Virus record (IMG/VR): IMGVR_UViG_3300025869_002060
Coordinates: 164,349-228,348 of that record
Direction: 5' to 3' (one strand)
Length of the DNA: 64,000 bases
Shown: one piece after another, positions 33 through 39,973 of the stretch
Numbering within the stretch: the stretch's first letter is position 1
Layout: the number at the start of each line of letters is the position of its first letter
Position numbers and translations under genes: made by a program
Notes under the pieces: model-generated
What the model saw: only the letters and a program-made list of their open reading frames with translations
What the model was told of the DNA's origin: nothing
The model's database searches: none

Positions 33-368
33 ATGAAGAAAACACTTGCCACAGTTGCATTAGTTGGCACCTTGATGATATCAAGTACTGCTCAAGCTGG
101 AGATAGAAACAACTGGATTGCTCCATTTGTAATTGGAACTATTATTGGCAACATACTGCACAATAATCAAGGACATACTACAACTTATGTTCAACCACAT
201 GTTACATATGTACAGCCGCCAGTGATACACGAAGTTAGGCCAGTTAGAAGACATGTACGTTGTGAGCGACACTGGGAAACTAGATATGATAGTTACGGTC
301 ATCCTTACCAAAGTTGGTATAAGGTTTGCACTCGTAACCACCGCAGACACAGTCATAGATACGATTAA
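33..368 (+). CDS. Small exported His/Arg-rich hypothetical protein
   Basis: GGAGG RBS; N-terminal signal-peptide-like MKKTLATVALVGTLMISSTAQA; basic His-rich C-terminus. Confidence 0.7.
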   Translation: MKKTLATVALVGTLMISSTAQAGDRNNWIAPFVIGTIIGNILHNNQGHTTTYVQPHVTYVQPPVIHEVRPVRRHVRCERHWETRYDSYGHPYQSWYKVCTRNHRRHSHRYD

Positions 369-382
369 AAGGACTGCAATAA

Positions 383-700
383 ATGTATCGACCATTGCCA
401 GACGGACTAACTATCCGTGATTCAAATGTACAAGGTCTTGGACTCTTTGCTACACAAGACTTTGTTGAAGATACGGTTTTTGGTATTGTACATATCAAAA
501 ACAAAAACTTTCCTCATGGTTATATAAGGACCGCATTAGGTGCTTTCTATAACCATTCCGAGGAACCTAATTGCAAAACTGTAAAAGGATTCTGGCATCA
601 AGTTCCTGTTGTATACCTTATGAGTACTAGCCCTATTCATGCCAATGACGAACTTACTGCAAAATATACTTTATACAACGATTTTAACGACATACCGTAA
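383..700 (+). CDS. Minimal SET-domain protein (putative lysine methyltransferase)
   Basis: SET motifs GLGLFA, YNHSEEPNC, ELTAKY. Confidence 0.85.
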   Translation: MYRPLPDGLTIRDSNVQGLGLFATQDFVEDTVFGIVHIKNKNFPHGYIRTALGAFYNHSEEPNCKTVKGFWHQVPVVYLMSTSPIHANDELTAKYTLYNDFNDIP

Positions 701-787
701 AAAATATTATTTTGGTTATCTAAATTGTAGACCTAAATAGGTTTATATGCTATAGTATATAAACAATCAACTTAAAGGTTTAGATGC

Positions 788-1417
788 ATGGACGACGAAG
801 CACTTATTAAATCTGTCAGGGTTACTGATAGGTCTGACAGCGATTTTATGGTGGGTAGAGAGATTGAACATACTCCAGCCTACAATATGCAAACTTTGTT
901 TTTGCCTAAAATATATCCAGTTAAATTTATTATGTCGGTTAAACCAAAACATTGTACACACCTTTACTTTGGTGCAAACAAAGGTTTTCCAGAAACTGTT
1001 GACTCTAAAGAGTTCAAGATATGGGAACTGACTGTACTTGCTTTTCTTAAGAAAGGCTTCTGGTGTACACTAGATTTTCAACCACACCATTGGAACTTGG
1101 TTATGAATTCCAAACTTATCAACGAACCGCGTTTTATTCCGTTGGTGTCTTTGGAAGTACCCGGAATTGAACGTGCAAATTATAATACTTGTATCAAACT
1201 TGACGACACAGGTATTGAAGCAACCAATGGTGGTGTATGGGTGCATGAACTTCACAACTTACGTACACGTGAAACATTTACACGTTGGGACGAATACCGA
1301 GGTGATAAGCATCATAAATTTTTAACTCAAGGTGTTAATGATCGTAAACGTGTTTATGGATTATGCATGGAAGACGATGTAATTAAAAACAAATCTACAA
1401 AGGAAGATGAACAATGA
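788..1417 (+). CDS. Hypothetical protein heading the 7-deazaguanine-associated cluster
   Basis: 209-aa ORF whose TGA overlaps the ATG of the QueD-like gene (ATGA coupling); no family recognised. Confidence 0.75.
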   Translation: MDDEALIKSVRVTDRSDSDFMVGREIEHTPAYNMQTLFLPKIYPVKFIMSVKPKHCTHLYFGANKGFPETVDSKEFKIWELTVLAFLKKGFWCTLDFQPHHWNLVMNSKLINEPRFIPLVSLEVPGIERANYNTCIKLDDTGIEATNGGVWVHELHNLRTRETFTRWDEYRGDKHHKFLTQGVNDRKRVYGLCMEDDVIKNKSTKEDEQ

Positions 1418-1848
1418 GCGCCAATGATAACATAGTCAGCTTAACTGGAAAAGGTATGGATAAGTCCAGCGAAGTTATTGGATTAGCAAAAAGAATGATT
1501 TGGGTTACTTTTACCAAAGAAGGTATGCATTGTTATCCTGCCGCGGCAACTGATCCTAACCTTGCCACTGGTGATGAATATGATGTAAGTTTTCTTGCTC
1601 ACCCACACAGACATATCTTTCATTTTCGTGTAGCTATTGAAGTATTTCATGACGATAGAGATATTGAATTCATTCAGTTTAAACGTTGGTTAATGAAACT
1701 GTTTGAAGGCGAACTAAACGTAGACTATAAGTCATGTGAGATGATTGCAGATGACTTATACAGAGAAATTGCAACCATTTATCCAGGACGTGATGTTACT
1801 ATTCATGTGTCTGAAGATGGTGAAAATGGTTGCGAAATTCAGTATTAG
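1414..1848 (+). CDS. QueD/PTPS-like T-fold protein (second QueD paralog)
   Basis: His-rich HPHRHIFHFRV metal-binding stretch, DRDIEF, SCEMIA and VSEDGENG motifs resemble QueD/PTPS T-fold enzymes. Confidence 0.7.
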   Translation: MSANDNIVSLTGKGMDKSSEVIGLAKRMIWVTFTKEGMHCYPAAATDPNLATGDEYDVSFLAHPHRHIFHFRVAIEVFHDDRDIEFIQFKRWLMKLFEGELNVDYKSCEMIADDLYREIATIYPGRDVTIHVSEDGENGCEIQY

Positions 1849-1852
1849 ACAC

Positions 1853-1881
1853 TTGACAAACTTGCTAGAACATATTACAAT
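1853..1881 (+). promoter_or_regulatory. Sigma70-type promoter
   Basis: TTGACA-17nt-TACAAT. Confidence 0.7.
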
Positions 1882-1925
1882 AATGAACTTCAACTTACTT
1901 ACACTCCAAAAGAAGGAACAAAACA

Positions 1926-2165
1926 ATGAAGTCCGAAGTCACAGCAATATTCGACGATCTCGATCAATACCGTCAGTTTTGTGTGCAGTTTGGGAGGCCC
2001 TATAATGAACGGGATCTCTACAATAAGTCCAACAATCACTATGTTGATTTTTTGGCATTCAAGGAAGGCAAACGAATTCGTAACCACTGGAATAGCCAGT
2101 CCAAGAAGAAGCGACCGTTTGTGAAAAAGAGCAATTATAAAATGGCCAAGAGGAAACATGCGTAA
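1926..2165 (+). CDS. Hypothetical basic protein
   Basis: 79-aa ORF downstream of a promoter, overlapping the next start. Confidence 0.7.
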   Translation: MKSEVTAIFDDLDQYRQFCVQFGRPYNERDLYNKSNNHYVDFLAFKEGKRIRNHWNSQSKKKRPFVKKSNYKMAKRKHA

Positions 2166-3339
2166 ATTATTCTATATGGGTTTAGAACCCTACGAAGGTC
2201 GATACACTTTACAACTTCAAGATTGGAGCACTGAAGTGTTCGACCGCCGGGGGATTGACTATGTTGTCGTTCCCGGAACTACAATAGATGACACTAAAGC
2301 AATTAGTGTTGGGCAAGTACTAGATGCACATGGTCGTTCATACTTTGGTATGAGTCAGTTGATGAACCTGGTACAGATGATGCGAAATGGAGAATGTACT
2401 GGTGAAGATGTTGTATTCTTTGAAGACATGTTTCAGCCTGGTATGGAATCATTACCTTATATCATGTGTCAGATACCAGAAGAGCAACGACCTAAGATTT
2501 TTCTACGTTGTTTAGCCCAGGCAATTGACCCAGATGACTTTGTTCATGTATGGGGTATGAGCAAGTGGATGTCATTGTACGAACAGATGTGCAACGAAAT
2601 TCCTAATGTTCATATTCTAGCAACCAATGAAGAGATGGTTGCACACATGAAGATTGCAAACTGGACTGCTCCAATTTATAACATCTCAGGTTTGAGTTTT
2701 GGTAAAGCAGAAGTTCAAAGACGTATTGATAACAAAATTAAACCGTGGACAGAACGTAGCGACAGAGTAGTATTTGCGGCTCGCTTTGACCAAGAGAAGC
2801 AACCAGACTTCTTTATGGATGTTATTGAAATGGTCAAAGAGAAAAGGCCTGATGTTGAGTTTGCAGTACTAAGTGGTGGTCCATTGCGTAGTAATAATGA
2901 AAAGTATTTGGATCGAGCACTTGCAATGCAGGCTGAAGGTAAACTTACAATACTGAAATACTTGCAAAAGAATGATTACTACTATACAGTAAATGATAGC
3001 AAAGTATTGTTTAATTGTGCATTGCAAGACTGGGTAAGCAATACTGTAAGTGAAGCAGATGCATTGGGTTGTAACGTGGTGTATCCTGCTTACAGAAGTT
3101 TTCCTGAAACGTTTGCAAATGATTATACACGTCTGTATACTCCGTGGAGCAAAGAAGATGCAGTAAGTAAAATCATGCAAGGTCTTTTGGAACCAAGTCC
3201 TAATATGGGTAAAATCAGTAACTGGACTGATGGTACTATTGATCGTATGATTGATATTATGGAAGGCAGTTACAAACACAATACTTGGTTACGAAGTGGT
3301 AACAGGTATCGTGATCATGTAGCGGAAGGGAAATACTAA
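2158..3339 (+). CDS. GT-B fold glycosyltransferase (GT4-like)
   Basis: C-terminal domain motifs VFAARFDQEKQP and NCALQDWVSNTVSEADALGCNVVYP. Confidence 0.8.
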   Translation: MRKLFYMGLEPYEGRYTLQLQDWSTEVFDRRGIDYVVVPGTTIDDTKAISVGQVLDAHGRSYFGMSQLMNLVQMMRNGECTGEDVVFFEDMFQPGMESLPYIMCQIPEEQRPKIFLRCLAQAIDPDDFVHVWGMSKWMSLYEQMCNEIPNVHILATNEEMVAHMKIANWTAPIYNISGLSFGKAEVQRRIDNKIKPWTERSDRVVFAARFDQEKQPDFFMDVIEMVKEKRPDVEFAVLSGGPLRSNNEKYLDRALAMQAEGKLTILKYLQKNDYYYTVNDSKVLFNCALQDWVSNTVSEADALGCNVVYPAYRSFPETFANDYTRLYTPWSKEDAVSKIMQGLLEPSPNMGKISNWTDGTIDRMIDIMEGSYKHNTWLRSGNRYRDHVAEGKY

Positions 3340-3340
3340 G

Positions 3341-4339
3341 ATGCCTGAAAACACCGTATTAATTACCGGCAGTGATGGCTACGTTGGTAGCCATGTTGCT
3401 AAAGCATTTAAAGATATCAGTTGGTATGTGTGCGGTTTAGATCGCACTGGTGCAAATGAAAATGCACGTTCATACTGTAACGAGTTTTTACGTGCTGATT
3501 ACGGTGAGAGTAAGGTCGTTGGAAAGTATATTGAAACTATCAAACCAGATGTTATTGTACATTGTGCTGGTACTAGTCTAGTAGGTCCAAGTGTTACAGA
3601 TCCGCATGCCTACTATCAGAACAATGTACTTGGTACAATCAATTTATTAGACAATATAATTAACGTACAAAAAGATAATTTACCTGTTGTGCTTTTTAGT
3701 AGTTCAGCAAGTGTTTATGGCAATCCCGAACAACTTCCAATCACAGAAGATAGCAAGATCAATCCTGTAAACCCATATGGTAATACAAAGTCAATAATTG
3801 AAACCATGCTCAAAGACTATGCTAGTGCATACGGATTGAACAGTGTATCATTTCGTTTCTTTAATGCCGCTGGTGCCAGTGAAGATCTTGGTCAAGTGTT
3901 TGGTGCTACTCATATTATTGCTCGCATACTTGAAGCCAAGTTACGCCAACGACAGTTTACTTTGTATGGTACAGATTATAAAACTGAAGATGGTACTTGT
4001 GTTAGAGATTATGTACACGTAAAAGATATTGCTCAGGCACACCTAAACGCCGTTACAAAATACACAGCCGTTGGTGCCAATGCATTTAATCTTGGCACTA
4101 GCAAAGGATTCAGTAACCAAGAGATTATTGATGCGGTGGTAGAACAAATTGGCGAATTCGAAGTAGAAAAAGGACCACGCAGAGAAGGTGATCCAGATAT
4201 GCTAATAGCCAGCAGTGATAAAGCAAAAACACAACTAGGTTGGGATCCAGTAAATAGTAACTTAGACACAATTATCAATGACGTATGGGCTTGGTATAAC
4301 GTACTACTAGAGAAACAAAAAGAGCAAGAACAGGCATGA
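3341..4339 (+). CDS. galE: UDP-glucose 4-epimerase
   Basis: TGSDGYVGSH Rossmann motif, FSSSASVYG, YGNTK (YxxxK), FRFFNAAGA, GTCVRDYVHV. Confidence 0.9.
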   Translation: MPENTVLITGSDGYVGSHVAKAFKDISWYVCGLDRTGANENARSYCNEFLRADYGESKVVGKYIETIKPDVIVHCAGTSLVGPSVTDPHAYYQNNVLGTINLLDNIINVQKDNLPVVLFSSSASVYGNPEQLPITEDSKINPVNPYGNTKSIIETMLKDYASAYGLNSVSFRFFNAAGASEDLGQVFGATHIIARILEAKLRQRQFTLYGTDYKTEDGTCVRDYVHVKDIAQAHLNAVTKYTAVGANAFNLGTSKGFSNQEIIDAVVEQIGEFEVEKGPRREGDPDMLIASSDKAKTQLGWDPVNSNLDTIINDVWAWYNVLLEKQKEQEQA

Positions 4340-4929
4340 GTTTTAGTCATATACAGGAGTTTGAGGAGCAATTAGCACTATATACTGGTGCCAAGTGGGC
4401 CGTAATGACAGACACCTGTACCAATGCATTAGAACTATGTTTTAGGTACGATGAAGTTAAAGAATGCCAGTTTAGTGCATATACCTACCTAAGCATTTAT
4501 CAGTTATTACATAGATTGGATATCTCTTATACACTTACAGAAGAAGTATGGAGAGGCCAATATCATTTTGAAAATACCCGTATTTGGGATAGTGCAAGAT
4601 TACTTAAAAAGAATATGTATCAACCAGGACAATTACAATGTTTAAGTTTTGGTTATGACAAACCCTTATATCTCGGTTGGGGTGGTGCGATCCTAACCGA
4701 CGACCCGGCGTTCTACAAACATACGATTCAGCAACGTTATGACGGGCGGAACCTCTCAGTTACTCCATGGGAAACAGAAATACTTCCACGTATTGCATTC
4801 CATATGAGACCTACCCCTGAGATTGCACTAGATGGACTAGAACGATTAAGGACCGGAGATATAAGTAAACTTCCACCAAAGGCCGCTGACGAATTATATC
4901 CAAATGGAAAAGATATAAAATGGAAATAA
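4336..4929 (+). CDS. Truncated DegT/DnrJ-like PLP-dependent protein
   Basis: FEEQLALYTGAKWAV, CTNAL, WDSA, SFGYDKPL (PLP lysine) and GGAILTDD; 197 aa versus about 370-400 aa for typical DegT proteins. Confidence 0.75.
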   Translation: MSFSHIQEFEEQLALYTGAKWAVMTDTCTNALELCFRYDEVKECQFSAYTYLSIYQLLHRLDISYTLTEEVWRGQYHFENTRIWDSARLLKKNMYQPGQLQCLSFGYDKPLYLGWGGAILTDDPAFYKHTIQQRYDGRNLSVTPWETEILPRIAFHMRPTPEIALDGLERLRTGDISKLPPKAADELYPNGKDIKWK

Positions 4930-4945
4930 AACCTAATATTACTAC

Positions 4946-4974
4946 TTGACAATAACTCTAAATAAAGGTATAAT
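4946..4974 (+). promoter_or_regulatory. Consensus sigma70 promoter upstream of the folE unit
   Basis: TTGACA-17nt-TATAAT. Confidence 0.85.
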
Positions 4975-4980
4975 AAGAAG

Positions 4981-5187
4981 ATGATAGACATTTATGCATT
5001 AATTATAGTATGTTCAATTGGACAACCATGTTACGAAGTAAGAGATAGAGTAGAAGAGTATACTACCATATCCGAATGTAAAAGTTCTATCGGACGATTA
5101 AAAAGGTTATATAATAGTACGATGGTTACCTGTCATAGAGGTAACATCTTAAGAGACAATCACGGACAACTACCAAAGTCCGCATAA
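4981..5187 (+). CDS. Small Cys-containing hypothetical protein
   Basis: 68-aa ORF with hydrophobic N-terminus and 4 Cys; ATG only 6 nt after the -10 box. Confidence 0.6.
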   Translation: MIDIYALIIVCSIGQPCYEVRDRVEEYTTISECKSSIGRLKRLYNSTMVTCHRGNILRDNHGQLPKSA

Positions 5188-5225
5188 TAAATGGCAATCC
5201 TCTGCCTTAACATCGGAGATTTTAA

Positions 5226-5924
5226 ATGAGTGAACTAATATCTAAAATTATCACAGATCGTGTAAAAGAATCAGGCGACCGCTACTGGGCTGGTGATAAT
5301 ATTTCTAAACATATCCATAACGAATACGAAAAACAAGATTTAATTAATGAAATTGCAGTAGCATTTGAAGATGTTCTTGATGCATTGGTTATTGATAGAT
5401 TCAATGACCCTAACAGTATGGATACTGCAAGACGTCTTGCTAAAATGTATATTAATGAAGTTATGAGTGGCAGGTACGACCCAATGCCTAAGGCAACAGC
5501 CTTTCCTAATCATGTAGATGATGGATACAAAGGTATGTTGGTTGTACGTTCAGAACTTAAAAGTATGTGTTCGCATCATCATCAACCAGTAAGCGGTGTT
5601 GCATACATTGGTATTATTGCCGCAGAAACACTAATTGGTCTTAGCAAGTATACACGTATTGCTCAATGGTGTGCAAGGCGAGGTACACTACAAGAAGAAC
5701 TTAATAATGTTATTGCTAACGAGATTCAAAAAGCAACAGGTAGTCCTAACATAGGTGTTTACGTTCAGGCCACTCATGGTTGTTGCGAAAACAGAGGCAT
5801 TATGGCACATAGTAGTTTAACACAAACAACTGTACTTAGAGGTGCATTTAGTGATGATCCAGGCACTAAGAAAGAGTTTATGGATAACATTAAACTGCAA
5901 CAAGAGTTTGCTTGTGGAAAATAA
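5226..5924 (+). CDS. folE: GTP cyclohydrolase I
   Basis: TARRLAKMY, SMCSHHHQP, GLSKYTRI, LQEEL, HGCCENRG; GGAG RBS. Confidence 0.95.
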   Translation: MSELISKIITDRVKESGDRYWAGDNISKHIHNEYEKQDLINEIAVAFEDVLDALVIDRFNDPNSMDTARRLAKMYINEVMSGRYDPMPKATAFPNHVDDGYKGMLVVRSELKSMCSHHHQPVSGVAYIGIIAAETLIGLSKYTRIAQWCARRGTLQEELNNVIANEIQKATGSPNIGVYVQATHGCCENRGIMAHSSLTQTTVLRGAFSDDPGTKKEFMDNIKLQQEFACGK

Positions 5925-6385
5925 AGAGCACAGTTTTTGGTGCTAGAAAGGAAGTTATGTTTTTAAAGTTACTTGATCGATTAGGTCGAAAAAGAATTGT
6001 TTACGATAGGTTGGATGACGAGCCTTATCTTGAACGTTACTATGTGTTTATTAAAGAAAGAAAACACTTTCCTTTCAATATTTTCCTACACAAATTTCTT
6101 AAAAGCGATCCAGATGATTTACACGATCATCCTTGGGGATATGCTACACTTATTCTTAAAGGTGGATATTGGGAGCATACCCCCGACGGAAAGTTTTGGA
6201 GAGGTCCCGGACATTTTAGAATGTGCAAGTCCAACAATACACACAGAATTGAACTAGACCCTGATGTTCAAGCCTGGACATTGTTTATGCCCGGACCACA
6301 AAGGAAAGACTGGGGATTTATCAAAGACGGTAAATGGATTCAACACGAAAAATATCTTTCATCTAGAAAAATGTTAAAGGAATGA
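5912..6385 (+). CDS. Cupin-fold protein
   Basis: LHDHPW...ILKGGYWE and later HRIEL cupin metal motifs. Confidence 0.7.
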   Translation: MWKIKSTVFGARKEVMFLKLLDRLGRKRIVYDRLDDEPYLERYYVFIKERKHFPFNIFLHKFLKSDPDDLHDHPWGYATLILKGGYWEHTPDGKFWRGPGHFRMCKSNNTHRIELDPDVQAWTLFMPGPQRKDWGFIKDGKWIQHEKYLSSRKMLKE

Positions 6386-6906
6386 CAATGAATAAACTCT
6401 ATATTGACGATACTCAGATTAAAAATGCATGTCATTCCATTGTAACAAAAATGTATAGAGATAACTTTAAACCTAAATACATTGTAGGAATTACACGCGG
6501 CGGGCTAGTTCCAGCTTTATACCTAAGTCATATGACTGGTATTACAATGCATACACTAGATGTTCGTTTACGTGATGGTGATGAACAAGAATCAAATCTA
6601 TGGATGGCCGAAGATGCATTTGGTTATCCTAATCAAGACAGTGGCGGACAAGGAAAAAATATTTTAATTGTAGATGATATAAATGACACTGGTGCAACGT
6701 TCAACTGGATTAAACAAGATTGGCCCTCAGGGTGCTTACCTAACGATCTTCGTTGGAATGAAGTATGGCATAACAATGTACGTTTTGCAAGTATTATTGA
6801 CAATATGGGTAGCAACTTCAAGGTTGACTATTCAGAAATTGAGATTAATAAATCCGAGGAGGATGTGTGGGTAGTATTTCCGTGGGAAGAACCTTTAAGG
6901 GTCTAG
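6382..6906 (+). CDS. Type I phosphoribosyltransferase (xanthine/guanine PRT-like)
   Basis: VGITRGGLVPA, PRPP-binding ILIVDDINDTGAT, C-terminal WVVFPWE. Confidence 0.9.
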   Translation: MTMNKLYIDDTQIKNACHSIVTKMYRDNFKPKYIVGITRGGLVPALYLSHMTGITMHTLDVRLRDGDEQESNLWMAEDAFGYPNQDSGGQGKNILIVDDINDTGATFNWIKQDWPSGCLPNDLRWNEVWHNNVRFASIIDNMGSNFKVDYSEIEINKSEEDVWVVFPWEEPLRV

Positions 6907-7109
6907 AAGGAAAATACAATGTGCATTATAACTTTGATGTGCGAGCAACTACCGATGGTGGAATTCCAGGTACGACAATTAACTGGTGTAAAGAAAATAT
7001 AACTAACGAATGGGGTTGGTACTTTGATCAAGACAATAAAGATATCGGGTACTGTACTTTTATTGATGAAAAAGACGCAATTTATTTTGCATTAAGGTAC
7101 TCAAAATAA
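6867..7109 (+). CDS. Hypothetical protein
   Basis: 80-aa ORF; W...W...F.DEKDA.YFAL pattern resembles 24101..24397. Confidence 0.6.
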   Translation: MGSISVGRTFKGLEGKYNVHYNFDVRATTDGGIPGTTINWCKENITNEWGWYFDQDNKDIGYCTFIDEKDAIYFALRYSK

Positions 7110-7678
7110 TGCTTGGATTTTATCCAAATTTTAAAATCACATGCAATGTAGATTGGACTGAACTGTCATTACGTGTCACTGACACGGCTATAAATTATGT
7201 TCACACAAACAAATACAAAGAAAATATATTATACGAAAGTGTAAACAGTATCGTAGCAAGTCTACCTACAGGTGGTTGGATAAGCAAGAGTGGTCCAAGT
7301 TTTGATTTCTTTGTAATGGGCGGAATACCCGAAACCGAAATATTAGATAATTGGTTTAAAAAACAATTTCCAAATTTAACATTTACCCCAGCAACAATTT
7401 GTTGGAGTAGTAAAAATGTTCCGTTGCACAGAGACAACATAAAGAACGGACAATCAAGTTTAGTATATCCTATATCAAATAATAGTGGATACGGAACTGT
7501 ATATAGCAACGATGCCAAGTTCACTTATGGTACCGAAAAACATAAACCTGTTGTAATCAATATAACTGTTGATCACGAGGTAGTAATTACTGAACCAAGA
7601 GTCTGGTTCAGTATTCATATGCAAGAACCAATTAAAATGGTTAAAGAAGTACTTGACAATTATGCAAATAACGTATAG
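7109..7678 (+). CDS. Putative 2OG-Fe(II) oxygenase-like protein
   Basis: PLHRD (HxD) plus distal His (VDHEV) in a beta-rich fold pattern. Confidence 0.5.
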   Translation: MLGFYPNFKITCNVDWTELSLRVTDTAINYVHTNKYKENILYESVNSIVASLPTGGWISKSGPSFDFFVMGGIPETEILDNWFKKQFPNLTFTPATICWSSKNVPLHRDNIKNGQSSLVYPISNNSGYGTVYSNDAKFTYGTEKHKPVVINITVDHEVVITEPRVWFSIHMQEPIKMVKEVLDNYANNV

Positions 7679-7706
7679 TATTAAATATTATAAAGGTGAT
7701 TTCTAA

Positions 7707-8198
7707 ATGACATACTACAGTACAAAAACATACGGACACAACATAGGACTAAGTGCAGTGTTCCGTCAACCAAATGCAGATCACTCACATTGCCATTTGT
7801 TACATGGTTATAGTTTGCAGTTTAAATTTACATTTGGTTGTTCTGAATTAGATAAAAAAAACTGGGCCGTTGACTTTGGTGGATTAAAACCACTCAAAGC
7901 ATGGCTTGAAGATAGCTTTGATCATAAGACAGCAATTGATATTGCTGATCCTCATAAACAAGAATTTTATGATTTGCAGGACAAAGACTTATGTGAAGTA
8001 AGAGAATTTGACGGGGTTGGTGCAGAGAAGTTTGCAGAACATGCATGGCGCTTTGCAGACAAACTCGTCAAAGAAATGACAAATGGACGTTGTTGGTGTG
8101 AGAGTTGTGAGTGTGCAGAACACGGGGCAAATTCTGCTATTTATTCTCCGTATGTCGTACAAAAAACCTCGTTCAAGGAGAACCATAATGAACAATAA
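7707..8198 (+). CDS. queD: 6-carboxy-5,6,7,8-tetrahydropterin synthase
   Basis: HCHLLHGY, WAVDFGGLK, FDHK, AEKFAEH, CAEHGANSA motifs. Confidence 0.9.
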   Translation: MTYYSTKTYGHNIGLSAVFRQPNADHSHCHLLHGYSLQFKFTFGCSELDKKNWAVDFGGLKPLKAWLEDSFDHKTAIDIADPHKQEFYDLQDKDLCEVREFDGVGAEKFAEHAWRFADKLVKEMTNGRCWCESCECAEHGANSAIYSPYVVQKTSFKENHNEQ

Positions 8199-8394
8199 AC
8201 TACTATTGGCATTGCAGGCAAGGTATCAAGCACAAAAGGCAGAAGGCCTTGCTAATATCGATGTCTACATGCAAAATCCAGCAGGTATTGGCGAGCATCC
8301 AGACATCACTGGTGCTATTGCTGAACAAATTGCTAAGATTGCAGAAGCAGACGATGGTTTGCTTGTGTTAGAAGAAAACTTCAGTGACAAGTAA
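8188..8394 (+). CDS. Small hypothetical phage protein
   Basis: GGAG RBS before ATG 8188 (the track start at 8083 is too far upstream); NPAGIGEHPDI motif. Confidence 0.75.
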   Translation: MNNKLLLALQARYQAQKAEGLANIDVYMQNPAGIGEHPDITGAIAEQIAKIAEADDGLLVLEENFSDK

Positions 8395-8512
8395 TACTGA
8401 CAAACAGTGGATATGCCCGGTTTGTGGGCATATCCATTATGGCGAAACTCACCCTGAGGTTGATTGCCCTATCTGTGCATTGCCTGGTGAAGAATACATT
8501 GAACAAGAATAG
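8384..8512 (+). CDS. Rubredoxin-like / zinc-ribbon micro-protein (42 aa, not in ORF track)
   Basis: Manual translation from GTG: MTSNTDKQWICPVCGHIHYGETHPEVDCPICALPGEEYIEQE; two CxxC knuckles. Confidence 0.8.
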   Translation: MTSNTDKQWICPVCGHIHYGETHPEVDCPICALPGEEYIEQE

Positions 8513-8523
8513 AAAGGCACACT

Positions 8524-9396
8524 ATGAACTGGCGTTATAGCGAAGAATTTTATAGTATACAAGGTGAAGGCAAATTTGTAGGAGTACCTAGTGTATTTTT
8601 ACGTATGTTTGGTTGCAACTTTCGTTGTAAGAACTTTGGTAGATCCAAAGACGAAACCTTTGCTAAAAACGAACCAAATCCTGAAGTGCAAGAAGTTATT
8701 GATAATATTGATCAATACGAGAATTTTGGAGATTTACCAATTGTGCATACTGGTTGCGATACGTATGCAAGTATCTATCCGCAGTTTAAACGTTTTATGA
8801 AAAATCTTAACACTGACGAGGTAGCTGAACGTTTACTAGCATTAACACCAAATGGTTCATGGACCATGCCCAATGGGCAAGATATTCATCTAATTATAAC
8901 TGGCGGAGAGCCATTGCTTGGTTGGCAAAAAAATTATGTTGAATTATTTAATCATCCGAAAATGAAAGATTTAAAAAATGTTACAATCGAAACAAATGGT
9001 ACTCAAGCTCTTAGACCGGAGTTTGTTGACTTTATCACACATCAAGAAAGAATATGTATTACTTTCTCGTGTAGCCCAAAGTTATCCGTTTCGGGAGAGT
9101 CTTGGAGTGATGCTATTAACCCTGACATTGTTAGCACTTACTATAATCTTCCTAATAGTGATTTGTATCTTAAGTTTGTGGTTAACGATGATGTGGATGT
9201 GGACGAAGTTAGCAGAGCTACTGAAGAGTATCGTGCGGCCGGGGTTGAGTGTCCAGTATATACTATGCCGCTTGGCGGACGGTATGACGAGTATAAAGCA
9301 ACGACTAAAAGGGTCGCAGAACTCGCAATGCAAAAAGGGTGGAGATATACACCCAGACTACACGTTGATATCTTCGGAAATGCATGGGGCACGTAA
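8524..9396 (+). CDS. queE: 7-carboxy-7-deazaguanine synthase (radical SAM)
   Basis: EFYSIQGEG, FLRMFGCNFRC...GCDT, ITGGEPLL, IETNGT, SPKL, PRLHVDIFG. Confidence 0.92.
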   Translation: MNWRYSEEFYSIQGEGKFVGVPSVFLRMFGCNFRCKNFGRSKDETFAKNEPNPEVQEVIDNIDQYENFGDLPIVHTGCDTYASIYPQFKRFMKNLNTDEVAERLLALTPNGSWTMPNGQDIHLIITGGEPLLGWQKNYVELFNHPKMKDLKNVTIETNGTQALRPEFVDFITHQERICITFSCSPKLSVSGESWSDAINPDIVSTYYNLPNSDLYLKFVVNDDVDVDEVSRATEEYRAAGVECPVYTMPLGGRYDEYKATTKRVAELAMQKGWRYTPRLHVDIFGNAWGT

Positions 9397-9469
9397 GAAA
9401 GAAACGCCATTAGAAAAGGCTATGAAAGCACCCATTGACATTGACAAACTGAGGAACCGAGGATTTTGA
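9380..9469 (+). CDS. Possible 29-aa micro-ORF
   Basis: MHGARKKETPLEKAMKAPIDIDKLRNRGF bridges the queE end and the next start with overlaps at both ends. Confidence 0.35.
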   Translation: MHGARKKETPLEKAMKAPIDIDKLRNRGF

Positions 9470-10137
9470 CCAAAGTAGTACACACCCAAATAGTATGTGG
9501 AATGCCACACCTACTATCAAATTTTGATTTGAACCTAAATCATCTTAGCAAAGAACTTGGAGACATACACTGGCATTTTATGTATGATCGTCCCGGTGAT
9601 GCAACAGTAAAAGGTGAGCGTGTTTATCAAAGTTTTCTACGTCTTGATTTTGACATTGTAGATACATTTAAAGAAGATGATGTACTTCATATTGTTACAA
9701 CAGGAGAACAAGTTGACGATGCTATCTTTAAGACTGTACATACATTTGGTAAAAATAAAATTACCTTGTACAGTATTGGGATAATTATTGATAAGGGTTC
9801 ACTTGTTAAAGCTATAACTGCAAAAAATAGAGACTTAGAGTTTTGGGCCAATCACAGAAATTTTAAACGTGTTACACGTTCAAAAGAAATATTAGCCTCA
9901 TTTAATACGTATCCTAGTATTGATTTTAATTGTGCTGGAATACTATATTGTGCAAACTATGTTAGGTACATATACCAGTTTGCAGATATACTAAAGAAAC
10001 AAGTTACTGTTAAAAATATGTACTTCTTTGGTAACATTAAACCATATCAAGTACTTGATATTGTTCAGGACGAACACGGCATACATATTATTAGTGAAGA
10101 CCGATTAATAGCAACTTGTATATGCGAACTAGAATAG
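9466..10137 (+). CDS. Double-hotdog protein resembling the Pnap_2097/LnmK-related biosynthetic family
   Basis: GMPHL...LSKELGDIHW, ERVYQSFL, DFNCAGILY, YFFGNI motifs recalled from that family. Confidence 0.55.
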   Translation: MTKVVHTQIVCGMPHLLSNFDLNLNHLSKELGDIHWHFMYDRPGDATVKGERVYQSFLRLDFDIVDTFKEDDVLHIVTTGEQVDDAIFKTVHTFGKNKITLYSIGIIIDKGSLVKAITAKNRDLEFWANHRNFKRVTRSKEILASFNTYPSIDFNCAGILYCANYVRYIYQFADILKKQVTVKNMYFFGNIKPYQVLDIVQDEHGIHIISEDRLIATCICELE

Positions 10138-10147
10138 GAGTAGAAAT

Positions 10148-10489
10148 ATGAATTCATTTTTTGATAAGTTTAAGAAGAAACCTGCTACAGCCACTCCTCC
10201 AAAGCAGAAGCCTAAGAAGACTCCAAAGGAAATTGCTACCGAAGCAGGTGAACCATGGGTTGAAGTTATCTCAATGGATATTGATCCGGATGATGTTGGC
10301 AACGGGGCATTTGAATTAGACTGGAATGATAAATTTATTGTTAATTTAGTCAGAGCAGGATACCAGGTCAAACCAGGCGAAGCCGAAGAATTAATTGTAG
10401 ATCGTTGGTTTCAATCTGTTTGTCGCAATGTTGTTATGGAAAACTATGAACAAGAACAAGCAGATCCTGATATTCGAAATCAGAAGTAA
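10148..10489 (+). CDS. Hypothetical protein
   Basis: GGAG RBS; 113 aa. Confidence 0.75.
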   Translation: MNSFFDKFKKKPATATPPKQKPKKTPKEIATEAGEPWVEVISMDIDPDDVGNGAFELDWNDKFIVNLVRAGYQVKPGEAEELIVDRWFQSVCRNVVMENYEQEQADPDIRNQK

Positions 10490-11217
10490 TGTCAAAGATA
10501 CTATACATTAACGGCGACAGTCATGCGGCCGGCGCTGAAGCAGTGGTTTCATTTGCATTTGCAGAAGATGATCCACATAACTATCCTCCGCCTAATCGTA
10601 AACCACACCCAGAAAACGAAATAGCAAGTTTTGGCAACGTATTAGCAGATCAATTGGGCATGACTCCTTACAATGATAGCGAGAGTGCTAGTAGCAATGA
10701 TCGTATTGTACGTACTACCCGGAAATGGCTTGAAGAAACATCAGAAAAACCTGGACTAGTATTAATTGGATGGAGTACTTGGGAAAGAGAAGAATGGTTC
10801 CATGATAATGAATATTTTCAGGTAAATTGTAGTGGAGTTGACCTGGTCCCACGAGATTTGCGAGATAAATACAAGCAGTGGATTATAACACAATCAAAAA
10901 AAGAACGTGAACTAGAATATAAATGGCATGATGAAATACATCAGTTCCATTTAGAATTATCAAGAAAGAACATAAATCACCTATTCTTTAATACATATCA
11001 GTATTTCTTTAACACTGTGTCGTTTAGTCGTGAAAAACTAAATTGGGACAACTGTTATATCAACCCATACGAACAAGACGGAACATATTACTATTACCTA
11101 AAGAAACAGGGTTATAGTACAGTAAACAAAAATAGTTATCATTACCCAAAATTAGCACATCGTGCTTGGGCAGACTATTTAAGACAATATCTCCAAAGAG
11201 GCGGAAATCACATTTAA
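10489..11217 (+). CDS. SGNH/GDSL-like protein
   Basis: Block I INGDSH; C-terminal HYPKLAH. Confidence 0.6.
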   Translation: MSKILYINGDSHAAGAEAVVSFAFAEDDPHNYPPPNRKPHPENEIASFGNVLADQLGMTPYNDSESASSNDRIVRTTRKWLEETSEKPGLVLIGWSTWEREEWFHDNEYFQVNCSGVDLVPRDLRDKYKQWIITQSKKERELEYKWHDEIHQFHLELSRKNINHLFFNTYQYFFNTVSFSREKLNWDNCYINPYEQDGTYYYYLKKQGYSTVNKNSYHYPKLAHRAWADYLRQYLQRGGNHI

Positions 11218-11222
11218 ATTGG

Positions 11223-11251
11223 TTGACTTAATCAAAAATATGTATTATACT
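11223..11251 (+). promoter_or_regulatory. Sigma70-type promoter
   Basis: (GG)TTGACT-17nt-TATACT. Confidence 0.75.
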
Positions 11252-11285
11252 ATATAAAATTTGAATATTATAATAGGATATACAC

Positions 11286-12275
11286 ATGAAGTATCTGTTA
11301 GTTGACACCGCAAATACGTTCTTTCGTGCCCGGCATGCGGCATTTAGAGGATCTGATACTTGGACTCGATTAGGTTTTGCAATGCATGTTACCTTAGCCG
11401 GACTCAACAAAGTTTGGCGTGATCAACAAGGTGAACATATTGTATTCTGTCTTGAAGGACGCAGTTGGCGTAAAGACTTTTATGATCCGTATAAGAAAAA
11501 TAGGGCAGTGGCTCGTGCCGCCCTTACAGAAGCAGAGCTAGAAGAAGATAAAGTATTCTGGGAGGCATTTGACGACTTTAAAGACTTTGTGTCAGAAAAA
11601 ACCAATTGTACTGTTATGCAACACCCCCAACTAGAGGCAGACGATCTTATTGCAGGTTGGATACAAAGTCACCCAGACGATGAACATATTATTGTTAGTA
11701 GCGACAGTGATTTTTACCAGCTACTATCAAGTAACGTAAAACAGTACAATGGCATAACCGACGAGTTGCATACACTCGAAGGTATCTTTGATAAGAAAGG
11801 TAACAGAGTATTGGATAAAAAGACTAAAGAACCTAAAGTAATTCCAGACCCTGAATGGTTATTGTTTGAAAAATGTATGCGAGGTGACTCTAGTGATAAT
11901 GTATTCAGTGCATATCCTGGGGTACGTAAGAAAGGTACTAAGAACAAAGTTGGTCTACTAGAAGCATATGCTGATAGAAAGACTAAAGGATATAATTGGA
12001 ATAACCTAATGTTACAACGTTGGGTTGACCATAACGAAATTGAGCACCGTGTGCTTGATGACTACGAACGTAATGTAACATTGGTTGATCTTTCTGCTCA
12101 ACCAGATGACGTTAAACAAATTATTGCTACTACTATTGCAGAAAATAGTGTAACAAAAAACATCTCACAAATAGGAACTAAGTTTCTTAAATTTTGCGGC
12201 AAGTATGAACTTAACCGCATGAGTGAAAATGCTCAGCAGTTTGCTGAGATACTATCATCGGAGTATAAAGAATGA
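11286..12275 (+). CDS. rnh: 5'-3' exonuclease / T4 RNase H-like flap nuclease
   Basis: LVDTAN, SWRKDFYDPYKKNR, EADDLIA, SSDSDFYQL, GDSSDNV. Confidence 0.88.
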   Translation: MKYLLVDTANTFFRARHAAFRGSDTWTRLGFAMHVTLAGLNKVWRDQQGEHIVFCLEGRSWRKDFYDPYKKNRAVARAALTEAELEEDKVFWEAFDDFKDFVSEKTNCTVMQHPQLEADDLIAGWIQSHPDDEHIIVSSDSDFYQLLSSNVKQYNGITDELHTLEGIFDKKGNRVLDKKTKEPKVIPDPEWLLFEKCMRGDSSDNVFSAYPGVRKKGTKNKVGLLEAYADRKTKGYNWNNLMLQRWVDHNEIEHRVLDDYERNVTLVDLSAQPDDVKQIIATTIAENSVTKNISQIGTKFLKFCGKYELNRMSENAQQFAEILSSEYKE

Positions 12276-12760
12276 CACAAAAAACAGCCACTCCAGTTCT
12301 AAAAAATAAATTTTGGATTGTAGAAGATAACGGTAAAAAGATTGCCACTATTCAAGCCGTTGAAGGCGGCGGGTTTACGTATGTTAAAGGAGCAACATAC
12401 AGAGAACGATTCCCGGCACTCAAAGATATTGAAGTGAAATATAACGTTAGTATCAGCGACGAAAACAATGAATCAGCTAAAACTAAAGACAATTCATTGT
12501 ACGGATATCCAGTTGGAGATACAAAAACTTTTAACGAAAGTTACAATGCTCAAACTAAAATGCCGGTATTTACTAAAACTCCAGCAAGTAAAAGTCAATA
12601 TTGTGCAGGGTTTTATTGTATTGAACTTGACAACGATCAATGGATCAGTCACTTCTGTCCCAAGCTAATTACGGTCAGAAGGTATGCATATATGGGTCCA
12701 TTTAAAAACGAAAATGAAATGTTGGAAGCATGGAAAACAGCCTACCCACACCTAAGTTAA
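12272..12760 (+). CDS. Hypothetical protein
   Basis: 162-aa ORF coupled to the exonuclease gene. Confidence 0.75.
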   Translation: MTQKTATPVLKNKFWIVEDNGKKIATIQAVEGGGFTYVKGATYRERFPALKDIEVKYNVSISDENNESAKTKDNSLYGYPVGDTKTFNESYNAQTKMPVFTKTPASKSQYCAGFYCIELDNDQWISHFCPKLITVRRYAYMGPFKNENEMLEAWKTAYPHLS

Positions 12761-12987
12761 CTCGTAACTTACAAACTTTAAGTGACCGTGTGCAAGTTGC
12801 ACAACAGACAGGTAAACGAGAAGTTGTATTGGATATAAAACTTGCTAGTGGTGTGGTAAGTGAAATTGTTAAACTATTATCGCTTAATATTGAATTACAC
12901 CAGCAGTATTTAGAAAACCAACTTATTCAAGTTGAGCTTGATGCCGGAAATTACATTTTAGATCCTAACGAAAAAATAGATAAATAA
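12730..12987 (+). CDS. Hypothetical protein
   Basis: 85-aa ORF in the same run. Confidence 0.6.
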   Translation: MENSLPTPKLTRNLQTLSDRVQVAQQTGKREVVLDIKLASGVVSEIVKLLSLNIELHQQYLENQLIQVELDAGNYILDPNEKIDK

Positions 12988-13039
12988 AAGTAGCATATAA
13001 TAGAGGTATGCGGTTAACTCAATAAAAGCGATTTAAACT

Positions 13040-13327
13040 ATGTCAAGACCTAAGCCAAATATCATCATAGAGCATGTAAATAAACAATCATTTAAAAGTG
13101 ATCAGGTACTCGCCAGTGAAGGAATTTGGGCAGTGTATTATGAAGGCAAACCGATCAATCTTAAAACTCATAATATTCTTATTAGTTATCCTGGACCAAA
13201 ATACAAAAAGGTTTCATTTAGCAATCCAGGACATGCAATTAATTTAGCAAAGAAACTAAACGAGTTATTTAACAATGACGGTTTTACAGTAGTACTGTTG
13301 AAAAAAGGTGAAACAATTTACCCCTAA
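13040..13327 (+). CDS. Hypothetical protein (MSRPKP...)
   Basis: 95 aa; preceded by ATAAATA late-promoter-like motif at 12980-12986. Confidence 0.8.
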   Translation: MSRPKPNIIIEHVNKQSFKSDQVLASEGIWAVYYEGKPINLKTHNILISYPGPKYKKVSFSNPGHAINLAKKLNELFNNDGFTVVLLKKGETIYP

Positions 13328-13694
13328 ACGTTACAGTCAATCACAAGTGGCTAAGATTATATTAACTTTGCCAGATTTGCCTCCTGAATTAAATTCCCTA
13401 CCAAAACTAAATTTAACAATTTGGAAGAATCCTCTCAATAAAGAGAGTTTACACCTTAGTCATCAAGGTTGGTTGCTTGCCAACAAACTAAAAATGACCA
13501 TGTACAAATTTGAGCTTCCCAGTGCCTTTACTCCCAAACAACTACTAGAGCTAGAGAGATATCTCGCTGGACCTTACCATGTATATCATAAAGGATTGCG
13601 TCTAGCAGTTCTCGATGAGTCAGATTCTGTGATGTTAAATCTTCAAAAAGACAATATTCCAGGATATTTAGACAATTTATCTAAATATTCGTAA
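13308..13694 (+). CDS. Hypothetical protein
   Basis: 128-aa ORF overlapping the previous stop. Confidence 0.7.
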   Translation: MKQFTPKRYSQSQVAKIILTLPDLPPELNSLPKLNLTIWKNPLNKESLHLSHQGWLLANKLKMTMYKFELPSAFTPKQLLELERYLAGPYHVYHKGLRLAVLDESDSVMLNLQKDNIPGYLDNLSKYS

Positions 13695-13702
13695 TTTTTT
13701 GG

Positions 13703-13731
13703 TTGACTTTTTGGGTATCTTATAGTACTAT
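13703..13731 (+). promoter_or_regulatory. Sigma70-type promoter
   Basis: (GG)TTGACT-17nt-TACTAT. Confidence 0.7.
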
Positions 13732-39972: not shown

Positions 39973-39973
39973 A

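What the first reader, a model, noticed from the sequence alone, without database searches (positions are those of the whole stretch)
788..10137. 7-deazaguanine pathway that stops at CDG and is interleaved with sugar enzymes: candidate new hypermodified base
Seen: folE, queD and queE (GTP to CDG) are all present, while queC and queF are absent from the cluster and the whole window. The same co-oriented, often translationally coupled block holds a second QueD paralog, a GT-B glycosyltransferase, GalE, a mini-DegT, a cupin, a PRTase, a 2OG-oxygenase-like ORF, a rubredoxin-like ORF and a hotdog protein. Established: phages use FolE/QueD/QueE products with DpdA transglycosylases to put 7-deazaguanines (dPreQ0, dPreQ1, dG+, dADG, dCDG, dDG) into DNA; I know of no glycosylated member. 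Inference: this phage may make CDG or 7-deazaguanine and decorate it with a galactose-derived or amino sugar. No DpdA/TGT is visible in this window, so the insertion step is unproven.
Basis: partly seen in the sequence, partly recalled or inferred. Interest (0 to 1): 0.85.

Follow-up and report, generated by a model that had tools for sequence, protein, structure and literature searches.

The report
Sugar-linked 7-deazaguanine DNA modification module
A marine jumbo phage carries the known gene set for replacing guanine in its DNA with 7-deazaguanine, and a sugar-transferring enzyme almost always sits next to that set in hundreds of phages, so the DNA base may carry a sugar, which has not been reported for any purine in DNA.

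Summary
Most of the gene inventory is real: FolE, QueD, QueE, a QueD paralog, a GT4 glycosyltransferase, a true GalE, a truncated DegT, a cupin and a 6-oxopurine PRTase, all co-oriented and often overlapping. No QueC, QueF or Pfam TGT was found in the window. The "2OG-oxygenase", "rubredoxin" and "hotdog" ORFs have no profile support.

Two corrections:
- **The QueD paralog (1414-1848) is DpdL.** It is the predicted CDG decarboxylase of the published dDG pathway, so the pathway probably goes on to 7-deazaguanine rather than stopping at CDG.
- **A DpdA-like gene exists.** It lies 1.8 kb upstream of the window on the same 228-kb contig. It has the DSGGFQ and FDC motifs, and its only significant fold matches are tRNA-guanine transglycosylase.

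The new result is that the GT is an integral part of the module. DpdL lies within 2.8 kb on the same strand in 145 of 148 loci with enough flank. It is present in all 17 GT clusters at 50% identity and in all 16 isolate phage records that have the GT, including PA5oct, whose modified G is unidentified.

A glycosylated 7-deazaguanine is plausible and unreported, but it is not shown here.

The parts
788..1417 (+). Conserved protein of unknown function ('o788' family; homolog of Acidovorax phage ACP17 gp122), directly upstream of DpdL with a 4-base overlap
   Evidence: Present in 66/80 loci of the window's clade and 26/80 of the distant clade. ACP17 gp122 links to it by jackhmmer at 5.6e-45. There are 821 clusters in the representative library. 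The AF2 model is confident (pLDDT 84.3) but has no fold match (best E 0.026) and no sequence match in PDB. Invariant acidic residues are listed.
1414..1848 (+). DpdL: QueD/T-fold paralog, predicted 7-carboxy-7-deazaguanine decarboxylase
   Evidence: It carries the motif FLAHPHRHIF, which fits the published DpdL signature LxxxHRHxF and replaces QueD's CxxxHGH (PMC10516641). phrog_17812 matches at 1.7e-30. tblastn homologs are found in 28 phage records, including phiST CGPG_00067, ACP17 and PA5oct.
1926..2165 (+). Small ORF of unknown function overlapping the GT start
   Evidence: No family match. Homologs at the same position in 24/80 related loci.
2158..3339 (+). GT4-family (GT-B type) glycosyltransferase, a core partner of DpdL
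   Evidence: Glycos_transf_1 2.7e-9, above the Pfam cut-off. The nearest solved relatives are group-1 glycosyltransferases (7ec7, 1.3e-6). It keeps a D/E-x7-E motif and an invariant N-terminal ExxExRYT motif. It is 71-88% identical across at least 600 viral contigs and belongs to at least 7,997 protein clusters. For DpdL co-occurrence.
3341..4339 (+). UDP-glucose 4-epimerase GalE
   Evidence: TIGR01179 equivalog scores 307.4 bits against a 262.3 cut-off. An epimerase sits at this position in 77/80 loci of the window's clade but only 7/80 of the distant clade.
4336..4929 (+). Truncated DegT-like protein (197 aa) that keeps the SFxxxK PLP-lysine stretch
   Evidence: DegT_DnrJ_EryC1 2.1e-10 in two short stretches. 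NCBIfam stretches 5-43 and 96-131. The sequence was read. Present in 18/80 loci, so it is an accessory gene.
4981..5187 (+). Lineage-specific small ORF, unknown
   Evidence: No family match. Found in 4/80 loci, which are the window's own copies. No paired CxxC motifs, so it does not look rubredoxin-like.
5226..5924 (+). GTP cyclohydrolase I (FolE)
   Evidence: PF01227 9e-38. NCBIfam FolE 1.4e-41. Present in 70/80 and 58/80 loci.
5912..6385 (+). Cupin-like protein, accessory
   Evidence: phrog_4786 ('cysteine dioxygenase') 7.1e-38. Weak Cupin_2 matches in PDB at E about 0.05. Present in only 9/80 and 5/80 loci.
6382..6906 (+). 6-oxopurine-type phosphoribosyltransferase
   Evidence: Pribosyltran 1e-11. 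The closest NCBIfam model is xanthine PRTase at 8.5e-14, below its cut-off. The nearest solved structures are purine PRTase 1vdm (2e-12), Sulfolobus GpT and E. coli XGPRT. Present in 61/80 and 24/80 loci, in BUCT-ZZ01 and in PA5oct gp163.
6867..7109 (+). Lineage-specific small ORF, unknown
   Evidence: No family match. Found in 5/80 loci.
7109..7678 (+).
   Evidence: No Pfam or PHROG match and no significant PDB match. Found in 5/80 loci.
7707..8198 (+). QueD (6-carboxytetrahydropterin synthase), phage subtype with an HCxLLHGY motif
   Evidence: PTPS 3.8e-12. QueD 1.9e-8. It is 42% identical to the QueD of phiST and shares its motif.
8524..9396 (+). QueE (7-carboxy-7-deazaguanine synthase, radical SAM)
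   Evidence: phrog_2076 2.1e-51. Five NCBIfam QueE models match at 1e-11 to 1e-15. The best isolate match is the QueE of BUCT-ZZ01 at 39.5%.
9466..10137 (+).
   Evidence: No Pfam, PHROG or PDB match. Found in 5/80 loci.

Best explanation
The block is the biosynthetic half of a DpdL-type 7-deazaguanine DNA-modification system.

Family assignments are shown; the chemistry follows from established knowledge of these families:
- FolE, QueD and QueE turn GTP into 7-carboxy-7-deazaguanine (CDG).
- DpdL is predicted, not proven, to decarboxylate CDG to 7-deazaguanine.

A TGT-fold DpdA-like transglycosylase is encoded 1.8 kb upstream of the window, at window-relative -3305 to -1836, next to the DNA polymerase. 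I infer that it swaps the 7-deazaguanine into phage DNA in place of guanine after replication.

The GT4 glycosyltransferase is a fixed member of this module. I infer that it adds a hexose to the 7-deazaguanine, either on the DNA or on the free base before insertion. In this marine clade the phage's own GalE would supply the donor, pointing to UDP-galactose or UDP-GalNAc. Candidate attachment sites are the exocyclic N2, as in huimycin, or C7, which DpdL frees.

The 6-oxopurine PRTase most likely recycles the guanine that base exchange releases back to GMP and GTP, the substrate of FolE. This too is inferred.

Confidence by step:
- About 0.85 that the DNA carries a 7-deazaguanine-type base.
- About 0.45 that the base carries a sugar placed by this GT.
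For: - **DpdL.** Signature motif and homology to phiST CGPG_00067 (PMC10516641).
- **Position.** The window is identical to contig IMGVR_UViG_3300025869_002060 from position 164349 (13,336 bases compared, 0 mismatches).
- **Upstream ORF L009:4538-6007.** It is a homolog of PA5oct gp168 (7.9e-79). DSGGFQ and FDC are invariant. The AF2 model has pLDDT 90.4. Its 10 matches with E<=0.001 in PDB are all Z. mobilis TGT, probability 1.00. hhalign links it to the proteins of X1 (annotated as queuine tRNA-ribosyltransferase), ACP17 and BUCT-ZZ01 (E 8e-6).
- **GT linkage.** DpdL lies on the same strand within 2.8 kb in 73/75 and 72/73 loci with upstream flank. It is present in 17/17 GT clusters at 50% identity. 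All 16 isolate records with the GT are among the 28 with DpdL. In all 4 bacterial loci the GT sits beside the DpdA-like gene, once with a YhhQ/Vut_1-family transporter between them.
- **GalE.** A true equivalog.
- **PA5oct.** It has the same gene order, and its DNA resists several restriction enzymes in a pattern pointing to a modified G of unknown structure (PMC12191111).
- **Failed reconstitution.** Cui et al. could not reconstitute dDG from ACP17 DpdL plus DpdA and suggested that other enzymes may be needed.
- **Precedent.** A GT glycosylates the 2-amino group of a 7-deazapurine in huimycin biosynthesis.
Against: - 7-deazaguanine has no hydroxyl group, so the acceptor atom is unknown and the chemistry would be unusual for a GT4 enzyme.
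- phiST makes plain dDG with DpdL and no GT, so DpdL does not need the GT.
- DpdL's activity has never been shown.
- GalE, the PRTase and o788 are clade-specific (5 of 17 deep GT clusters each).
- Synteny among related phages partly reflects common descent.
- Pfam does not recognise the DpdA-like protein as TGT, and its DNA-versus-tRNA specificity cannot be read from sequence.
- No structure was predicted for the GT.
Confidence: 0.45

Rival explanations
1. Plain dDG, as in Cellulophaga phage phiST. The module replaces G with unglycosylated 7-deazaguanine. The GT, with GalE, glycosylates something else, such as another DNA base, a virion or replication protein, or a host surface molecule. It travels with the module for regulatory or historical reasons.
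For: - phiST reaches about 100% dDG with FolE, QueD, QueE, DpdL and DpdA3 and no GT.
- dDG offers no obvious acceptor for a sugar.
- The GT's nearest solved relatives include a protein O-GlcNAc transferase type (7ec7; the identification of that entry is from my own knowledge).
- The window holds a second, separate sugar cassette (27130-29239), so this phage handles sugars for other purposes too.
Against: - The GT-DpdL linkage holds in 145/148 loci and 17/17 deep GT clusters, across jumbo and T4-like myophages of unrelated hosts.
- The GT family was found in only 4 of 185,579 species genomes, each time next to the DpdA-like gene.
- No hydroxymethylase for a pyrimidine acceptor was seen. The ThyA at 26243-27133 matches the full thymidylate synthase profile at 7.8e-109.
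Confidence: 0.3
2. Nucleotide-level route, tubercidin-like. The PRTase condenses CDG or 7-deazaguanine with PRPP to make a 7-deaza-GMP analogue. This is phosphorylated, reduced and incorporated by the phage polymerase. The TGT-fold protein has another role.
For: - A 6-oxopurine-type PRTase sits inside the module in 61/80 loci of this clade, in BUCT-ZZ01 and in PA5oct.
- QueC is absent.
- Tubercidin clusters likewise lack QueC and use CDG with a PF00156 PRTase (PMC6112128).
Against: - The PRTase is found in only 5 of 17 deep GT clusters, whereas the DpdA-like gene is in 12 of 17 and in 124 of 160 loci, despite short flanks.
- No UbiD decarboxylase, GMP reductase, dGTP-specific pyrophosphatase or nucleotide kinase appeared in the Pfam scans of the window.
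- All 7-deazaguanine phages studied so far have a DpdA (PMC10516641).
- A guanine-salvage role explains the PRTase equally well.
Confidence: 0.1
3. Not a DNA modification. The module either makes a free glycosylated 7-deazapurine metabolite (huimycin- or dapiramicin-like), or modifies tRNA, in the way glycosylated queuosine arises in eukaryotic tRNA.
For: - Precedent exists for a GT acting on a free 7-deazapurine.
- From my own knowledge, eukaryotic mannosyl-queuosine is made by a GT4-like enzyme.
- TGT enzymes were originally tRNA enzymes.
Against: - The DpdA-like gene lies beside the DNA polymerase.
- PA5oct virion DNA is restriction-resistant at G-containing sites.
- The window has no tRNA genes.
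- No transporter or regulator genes typical of metabolite clusters are present in the phage loci.
Confidence: 0.07

Closest known systems
dDG system of Cellulophaga phage phiST (FolE, QueD, QueE, DpdL, DpdA3; Cui et al. 2023, PMC10516641)
   Same: The same four biosynthetic families. These include the DpdL signature and the HCxLLHGY QueD subtype. QueC is absent. A TGT-superfamily gene lies nearby.
   Different: - phiST has no GT, GalE, PRTase or o788 homolog.
- Its DpdA3 (259 aa, LDNGAG motif) is not detectably related to the 489-aa DSGGFQ protein here or to its relatives.
- phiST has a MazG-like gene; no homolog was found here.
Pseudomonas jumbo phage PA5oct gp162-gp168 (Wroclawvirus)
   Same: The same order: DpdA-like gp168, GT gp167, DpdL gp166, a short epimerase-like gp164, PRTase-like gp163 and QueE gp162. 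Its DNA has a modified G of unknown structure (PMC12191111).
   Different: The GT is only about 22% identical. There is no full GalE and no o788 homolog in the region. The host and habitat differ.
Huimycin and dapiramicin biosynthesis (HuiG glycosyltransferase)
   Same: A glycosyltransferase acts on a 7-deazaguanine-type base made by FolE, QueD and QueE, attaching the sugar to the exocyclic 2-amino group.
   Different: It is an actinomycete metabolite cluster that uses preQ0 (QueC present) and has no transglycosylase.
Tubercidin pathway (TubE PRTase acting on CDG)
   Same: No QueC; CDG is the branch point; a PF00156 PRTase lies in the cluster.
   Different: The UbiD decarboxylase, GMP reductase and Nudix/HAD genes are not seen here. 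Here a T-fold DpdL and a TGT-fold enzyme are present.
T4 alpha- and beta-glucosyltransferases acting on 5-hydroxymethylcytosine
   Same: Phage GT-B enzymes that decorate an already modified DNA base with a hexose from a UDP-sugar (established knowledge).
   Different: Their acceptor is a hydroxymethyl group on a pyrimidine. No such group exists on 7-deazaguanine. No sequence relation was tested.

Membership tests
DpdL-type 7-deazaguanine (dDG) DNA modification system | FolE, QueD and QueE encoded together | tested here: met
DpdL-type 7-deazaguanine (dDG) DNA modification system | QueC absent | tested here: met
   No PF06508 match among the cluster ORFs or the window ORFs of at least 110 aa outside it, nor among the six largest ORFs of the 7.8 kb upstream. 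The other 156 kb of the contig was not seen.
DpdL-type 7-deazaguanine (dDG) DNA modification system | DpdL: QueD paralog with LxxxHRHxF in place of CxxxHGH | tested here: met
   FLAHPHRHIF at 1414-1848. The alignment includes phiST, ACP17, PA5oct, Phosso and BUCT-ZZ01.
DpdL-type 7-deazaguanine (dDG) DNA modification system | A DpdA-family transglycosylase in the same genome | tested here: met
   L009:4538-6007, 1.8 kb upstream of the window on the same contig. It is not of the DpdA3 subfamily.
DpdL-type 7-deazaguanine (dDG) DNA modification system | dDG present in virion DNA | not testable with these tools
   Needs LC-MS/MS of digested DNA.
TGT/DpdA superfamily (for the upstream 489-aa ORF) | TIM-barrel TGT fold | tested here: met
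   AF2 pLDDT 90.4. The top 10 Foldseek matches are all Z. mobilis TGT, probability 1.00, E 2.4e-7 to 8e-6, target TM 0.44-0.56. No other fold reaches E<=1e-3.
TGT/DpdA superfamily (for the upstream 489-aa ORF) | Catalytic aspartates in the DSGGFQ and FDC motifs | tested here: met
   D99-S100-G-G102-F-Q104 and F-D297-C-A299 are invariant in 21 sequences. Their equivalence to TGT Asp102 and Asp280 rests on my knowledge of TGT, not on a residue-level superposition.
TGT/DpdA superfamily (for the upstream 489-aa ORF) | Match to Pfam PF01702 or to a solved TGT by sequence | tested here: not met
   No Pfam match at E<=0.05. No TGT in the PDB profile search. phiST DpdA3 and the X1 protein annotated as TGT fail the Pfam test too.
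TGT/DpdA superfamily (for the upstream 489-aa ORF) | Acts on DNA rather than tRNA | not testable with these tools
   Only context speaks to this: it sits next to PolB, and PA5oct DNA is modified.
GT4 (GT-B) NDP-sugar glycosyltransferases | Glycos_transf_1 domain above the Pfam threshold, with the E-x7-E motif | tested here: met
   37.2 bits against 26.4. D291-x7-E299 here and E-x7-E in distant homologs. The fold itself was not predicted.
UDP-glucose 4-epimerase GalE | Equivalog model TIGR01179 above its trusted cut-off | tested here: met
   307.4 bits against 262.3.
Tubercidin-type CDG nucleotide pathway | PRTase together with a UbiD-family decarboxylase and a GMP reductase | tested here: not met
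   A PRTase is present, but PF01977 and PF00478 are absent from the Pfam scans of the window. Similarity to TubE was not tested because no sequence was at hand.

The most novel reading that the evidence does not exclude
The GT puts a hexose (galactose or GalNAc in the marine clade) on 7-deazaguanine, by N2- or C7-glycosylation. That would give the first sugar-bearing purine known in any DNA. The modification would be common in the ocean, since the GT family has at least 7,997 clusters at 90% identity, many from marine surveys. It would also explain the unidentified modified G of PA5oct and the failure to reconstitute dDG from ACP17 DpdL plus DpdA alone.
Probability: 0.4. Interest if true: 0.9.

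Novelty: new variant of a known kind. Interest (0 to 1): 0.75.

Why it matters
All eight known 7-deazaguanine DNA bases carry small substituents at C7, and sugars are so far known only on modified pyrimidines. A glycosyltransferase locked to DpdL and a DpdA-like enzyme in at least 17 deep lineages suggests one of two things. Either a further class of purine hypermodification exists, or the dDG pathway has an unknown obligatory step.

The question can be tested now. Cultured phages (PA5oct, ACP17, Xanthomonas X1 and BUDD, Synechococcus BUCT-ZZ01, Sinorhizobium Phosso) carry the same module.

The result bears on restriction and type IV defence evasion, on reading modified bases in nanopore data from marine viromes, and on the enzymology of N- or C-glycosylation of deazapurines.

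Tried and rejected
- **Megablast** of the 9.35-kb block against 50,697 phage records: no match.
- **phiST DpdA3 in the window or relatives:** none by blastp, jackhmmer or tblastn. hhalign of DpdA3 against the X1/ACP17/BUCT family was not significant.
- **Pfam hmmscan** cannot see any of these divergent transglycosylases. The absence of PF01702 in the window is therefore weak evidence on its own.
- **My first idea** was that the PRTase replaces DpdA, as in the tubercidin route. I downgraded it once the DpdA-like gene was found upstream.
- **o788 (788-1417) as a hidden DpdA:** rejected. It has no similarity to DpdA3 or to Phosso's 'glycosylase', and its confident model matches no known fold.
- **Informative domain fusions of o788:** none. 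The C-terminal extensions carry no Pfam domain and are not DpdL, GT or other module proteins.
- **Supplements of Cui et al.** are not held, so I could not learn which ACP17 gene they call dpdA.
- **No structure was predicted for the GT,** because both prediction jobs went to o788 and the DpdA-like protein.

Full report
**1. What is in the sequence**

Positions 33-15758 form one co-oriented + strand gene array.
- FolE (5226-5924), QueD (7707-8198) and QueE (8524-9396).
- A group-1 glycosyltransferase (2158-3339).
- An epimerase (3341-4339) that passes NCBI's GalE equivalog cut-off.
- A 197-aa DegT remnant (4336-4929) that keeps the PLP-lysine stretch.
- A cupin (5912-6385).
- A phosphoribosyltransferase (6382-6906). 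Its nearest families and solved structures are 6-oxopurine (xanthine/guanine) PRTases.

Many junctions overlap by a few bases.

Pfam finds no QueC, QueF or TGT in the cluster ORFs or in the other window ORFs of at least 110 aa. There are no tRNA genes.

They occur only in the window's own lineage.

**2. The second QueD paralog is DpdL**

ORF 1414-1848 carries FLAHPHRHIF. This is the LxxxHRHxF signature that Cui et al. (PMC10516641) use to separate DpdL from QueD (CxxxHGH). DpdL is their predicted CDG decarboxylase.

Homologs occur in 28 phage records. They include phiST CGPG_00067, ACP17, PA5oct-like phages, Xanthomonas X1 and BUDD, Sinorhizobium Phosso and Synechococcus BUCT-ZZ01.

In phiST this pathway gives 2'-deoxy-7-deazaguanosine at about 302,000 per million nucleotides. 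So the pathway here most likely proceeds past CDG to 7-deazaguanine. DpdL activity has never been demonstrated, however.

**3. The insertion enzyme lies just outside the window**

The window is the last 64 kb of viral contig IMGVR_UViG_3300025869_002060 (228,348 bp). It is identical to that contig over the 13,336 bases I could compare.

A 489-aa ORF lies 1.8 kb upstream of the window start (locus L009:4538-6007). DNA polymerase B and a methyltransferase lie further upstream. The evidence that it is a transglycosylase:
- It is a strong homolog of PA5oct gp168 (7.9e-79).
- An alignment of 21 relatives has invariant DSGGFQ and FDC motifs.
- Its AlphaFold model is confident (pLDDT 90.4).
- The only significant PDB fold matches are ten Z. 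mobilis tRNA-guanine transglycosylase entries, all at probability 1.00.
- Profile comparison links it to a family of ACP17, BUCT-ZZ01 and Xanthomonas X1 proteins; the X1 protein is annotated as queuine tRNA-ribosyltransferase (E 8e-6). jackhmmer merges the two families once more loci are added.

It is unrelated at sequence level to phiST DpdA3, and Pfam does not see it. I therefore call it DpdA-like: a TGT-superfamily enzyme in a DNA-modification context.

**4. The glycosyltransferase belongs to the module**

The window GT is 71-88% identical to proteins on at least 600 viral contigs. It belongs to at least 7,997 clusters at 90% identity in metagenomes.

In 80 loci of this clade the commonest gene order is DpdA-like, o788, DpdL, GT, epimerase, FolE, PRTase, QueE.

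A second set of 80 loci was fetched with the distant GTs of ACP17, Phosso, PA5oct and X1, which are 21-24% identical to the window's GT. This set shows the same linkage. DpdL lies on the same strand within 2.8 kb in 73/75 and 72/73 loci with upstream flank.

| Family | GT clusters at 50% identity that contain it (of 17) |
|---|---|
| DpdL | 17 |
| FolE | 16 |
| QueE | 14 |
| DpdA-like | 12 |
| QueD | 12 |
| o788 | 5 |
| GalE | 5 |
| PRTase | 5 |

Among 50,697 isolate phage records, all 16 that have the GT are among the 28 that have DpdL. Phosso adds a seventeenth.

In one genome for each of 185,579 bacterial and archaeal species the GT was found only four times, always beside the DpdA-like gene. 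In one of these, Ochrobactrum, a Vut_1 (YhhQ-family) gene lies between them, which from my own knowledge is the preQ0/preQ1 importer family.

**5. Accessory parts**

- **GalE** is near-universal in the window's marine clade (77/80) and rare elsewhere (7/80). It looks like a clade-specific donor supply.
- **The PRTase** is present in 61/80 loci of this clade and 24/80 of the distant clade, in BUCT-ZZ01 and in PA5oct.
- **o788 (788-1417)** is a widespread family (821 clusters at 50% identity) with invariant acidic residues. Its model is confident but has no fold or sequence match in PDB and no informative fusions. Its role is unknown.

**6. Mechanism**

The best-supported chain runs as follows.
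- GTP goes to CDG through FolE, QueD and QueE. The family assignments are shown; the chemistry is established.
- DpdL converts CDG to 7-deazaguanine (predicted by Cui et al.).
- The DpdA-like enzyme exchanges it into DNA (inferred from fold, motifs and context).
- The GT adds a sugar to the base (inferred from co-inheritance only).

PA5oct has the same module, and its virion DNA resists several restriction enzymes in a pattern pointing to an unidentified modified G (PMC12191111). Cui et al. could not obtain dDG from ACP17 DpdL plus DpdA in E. coli and suggested missing enzymes.

There are precedents for both unexplained enzymes:
- A glycosyltransferase N-glycosylates the 2-amino group of a 7-deazapurine in huimycin biosynthesis.
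- A PF00156 PRTase acts on CDG in tubercidin biosynthesis.

With a transglycosylase present, I think guanine salvage is the more economical role for the PRTase. Base exchange releases one guanine per site, and GTP feeds FolE. A nucleotide-level route is not excluded.

The weak point is chemical. 7-deazaguanine offers no hydroxyl group, so the sugar would have to go on N2, C7 or C8, or O6.

**7. Comparison and novelty**

The biosynthetic core is a member of the published DpdL/dDG kind. The following are not described in the papers I could search:
- the fixed GT;
- the DSGGFQ-type 490-aa transglycosylase;
- o788;
- in this clade, GalE and the PRTase.

I rate it a new variant of a known kind. The phage itself is a marine jumbo phage. 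Its polymerase is closest to Phosso (50%), Atu_ph07 (46%) and Rak2-like phages (42%).

**8. Limits**

- Only 64 kb plus 7.8 kb of a genome of at least 228 kb was seen.
- Loci were chosen by GT similarity, so they show that the GT implies DpdL but not the reverse. phiST-type and several other DpdL phages lack the GT.
- No GT structure was predicted.
- Nothing here shows what is in the DNA.

Noticed in passing
window 38674-46833 (- strand), with 34656-36140 and 36103-36759: Six consecutive radical-SAM paralogs. Four have a SPASM domain placed N-terminal to the radical-SAM core, an unusual order. A carbamoyltransferase and a GDSL/DUF6071 protein lie next to them. Function unknown; possibly a peptide- or sugar-modifying array.
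   Followed up: partly
window 25822-29239 (+ strand): DHFR (25822-26328) and a canonical ThyA (26243-27133) are followed by a second sugar-nucleotide cassette: an SDR epimerase/dehydratase (27130-28137) and a full-length DegT aminotransferase (28028-29239). This amino-sugar pathway is separate from the GT/GalE block. Whether it feeds the same GT is unknown.
   Followed up: no
L172 (Ochrobactrum sp. MYb379) 638-13820; also L169-L171: A bacterial island holds a DpdA-like gene, a Vut_1/YhhQ-family transporter and the GT, flanked by a GmrSD type IV restriction enzyme and an integrase. It looks like a cellular version of the DpdA-like plus GT pair, fed by imported 7-deazaguanine precursors.
   Followed up: partly
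L009:2653-3648 (about 4.2-5.2 kb upstream of the window start): A SAM-dependent methyltransferase lies between DNA polymerase B and the DpdA-like gene. It may be a further DNA or base-modifying enzyme of the same region.
   Followed up: no
window 10489-11217 (+) and 36103-36759 (-): Two DUF6071/GDSL-like paralogs in one window. Their role is unknown.
   Followed up: no
window 788-1417: The o788 family gives a confident predicted structure with no match to any solved fold (best Foldseek E 0.026, TM about 0.3). It has 821 clusters at 50% identity in public data. It is a candidate new enzyme fold tied to deazaguanine modules.
   Followed up: yes
window 47138-63805 (- strand; not mapped gene by gene): Large ORFs include one of 1,708 aa. 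Collagen-repeat, Peptidase_G2, FG-GAP, CBM_5_12 and glycine-rich domain matches occur somewhere among the large - strand ORFs (34656-63805) scanned together. They look like tail-fibre or host-recognition proteins.
   Followed up: no
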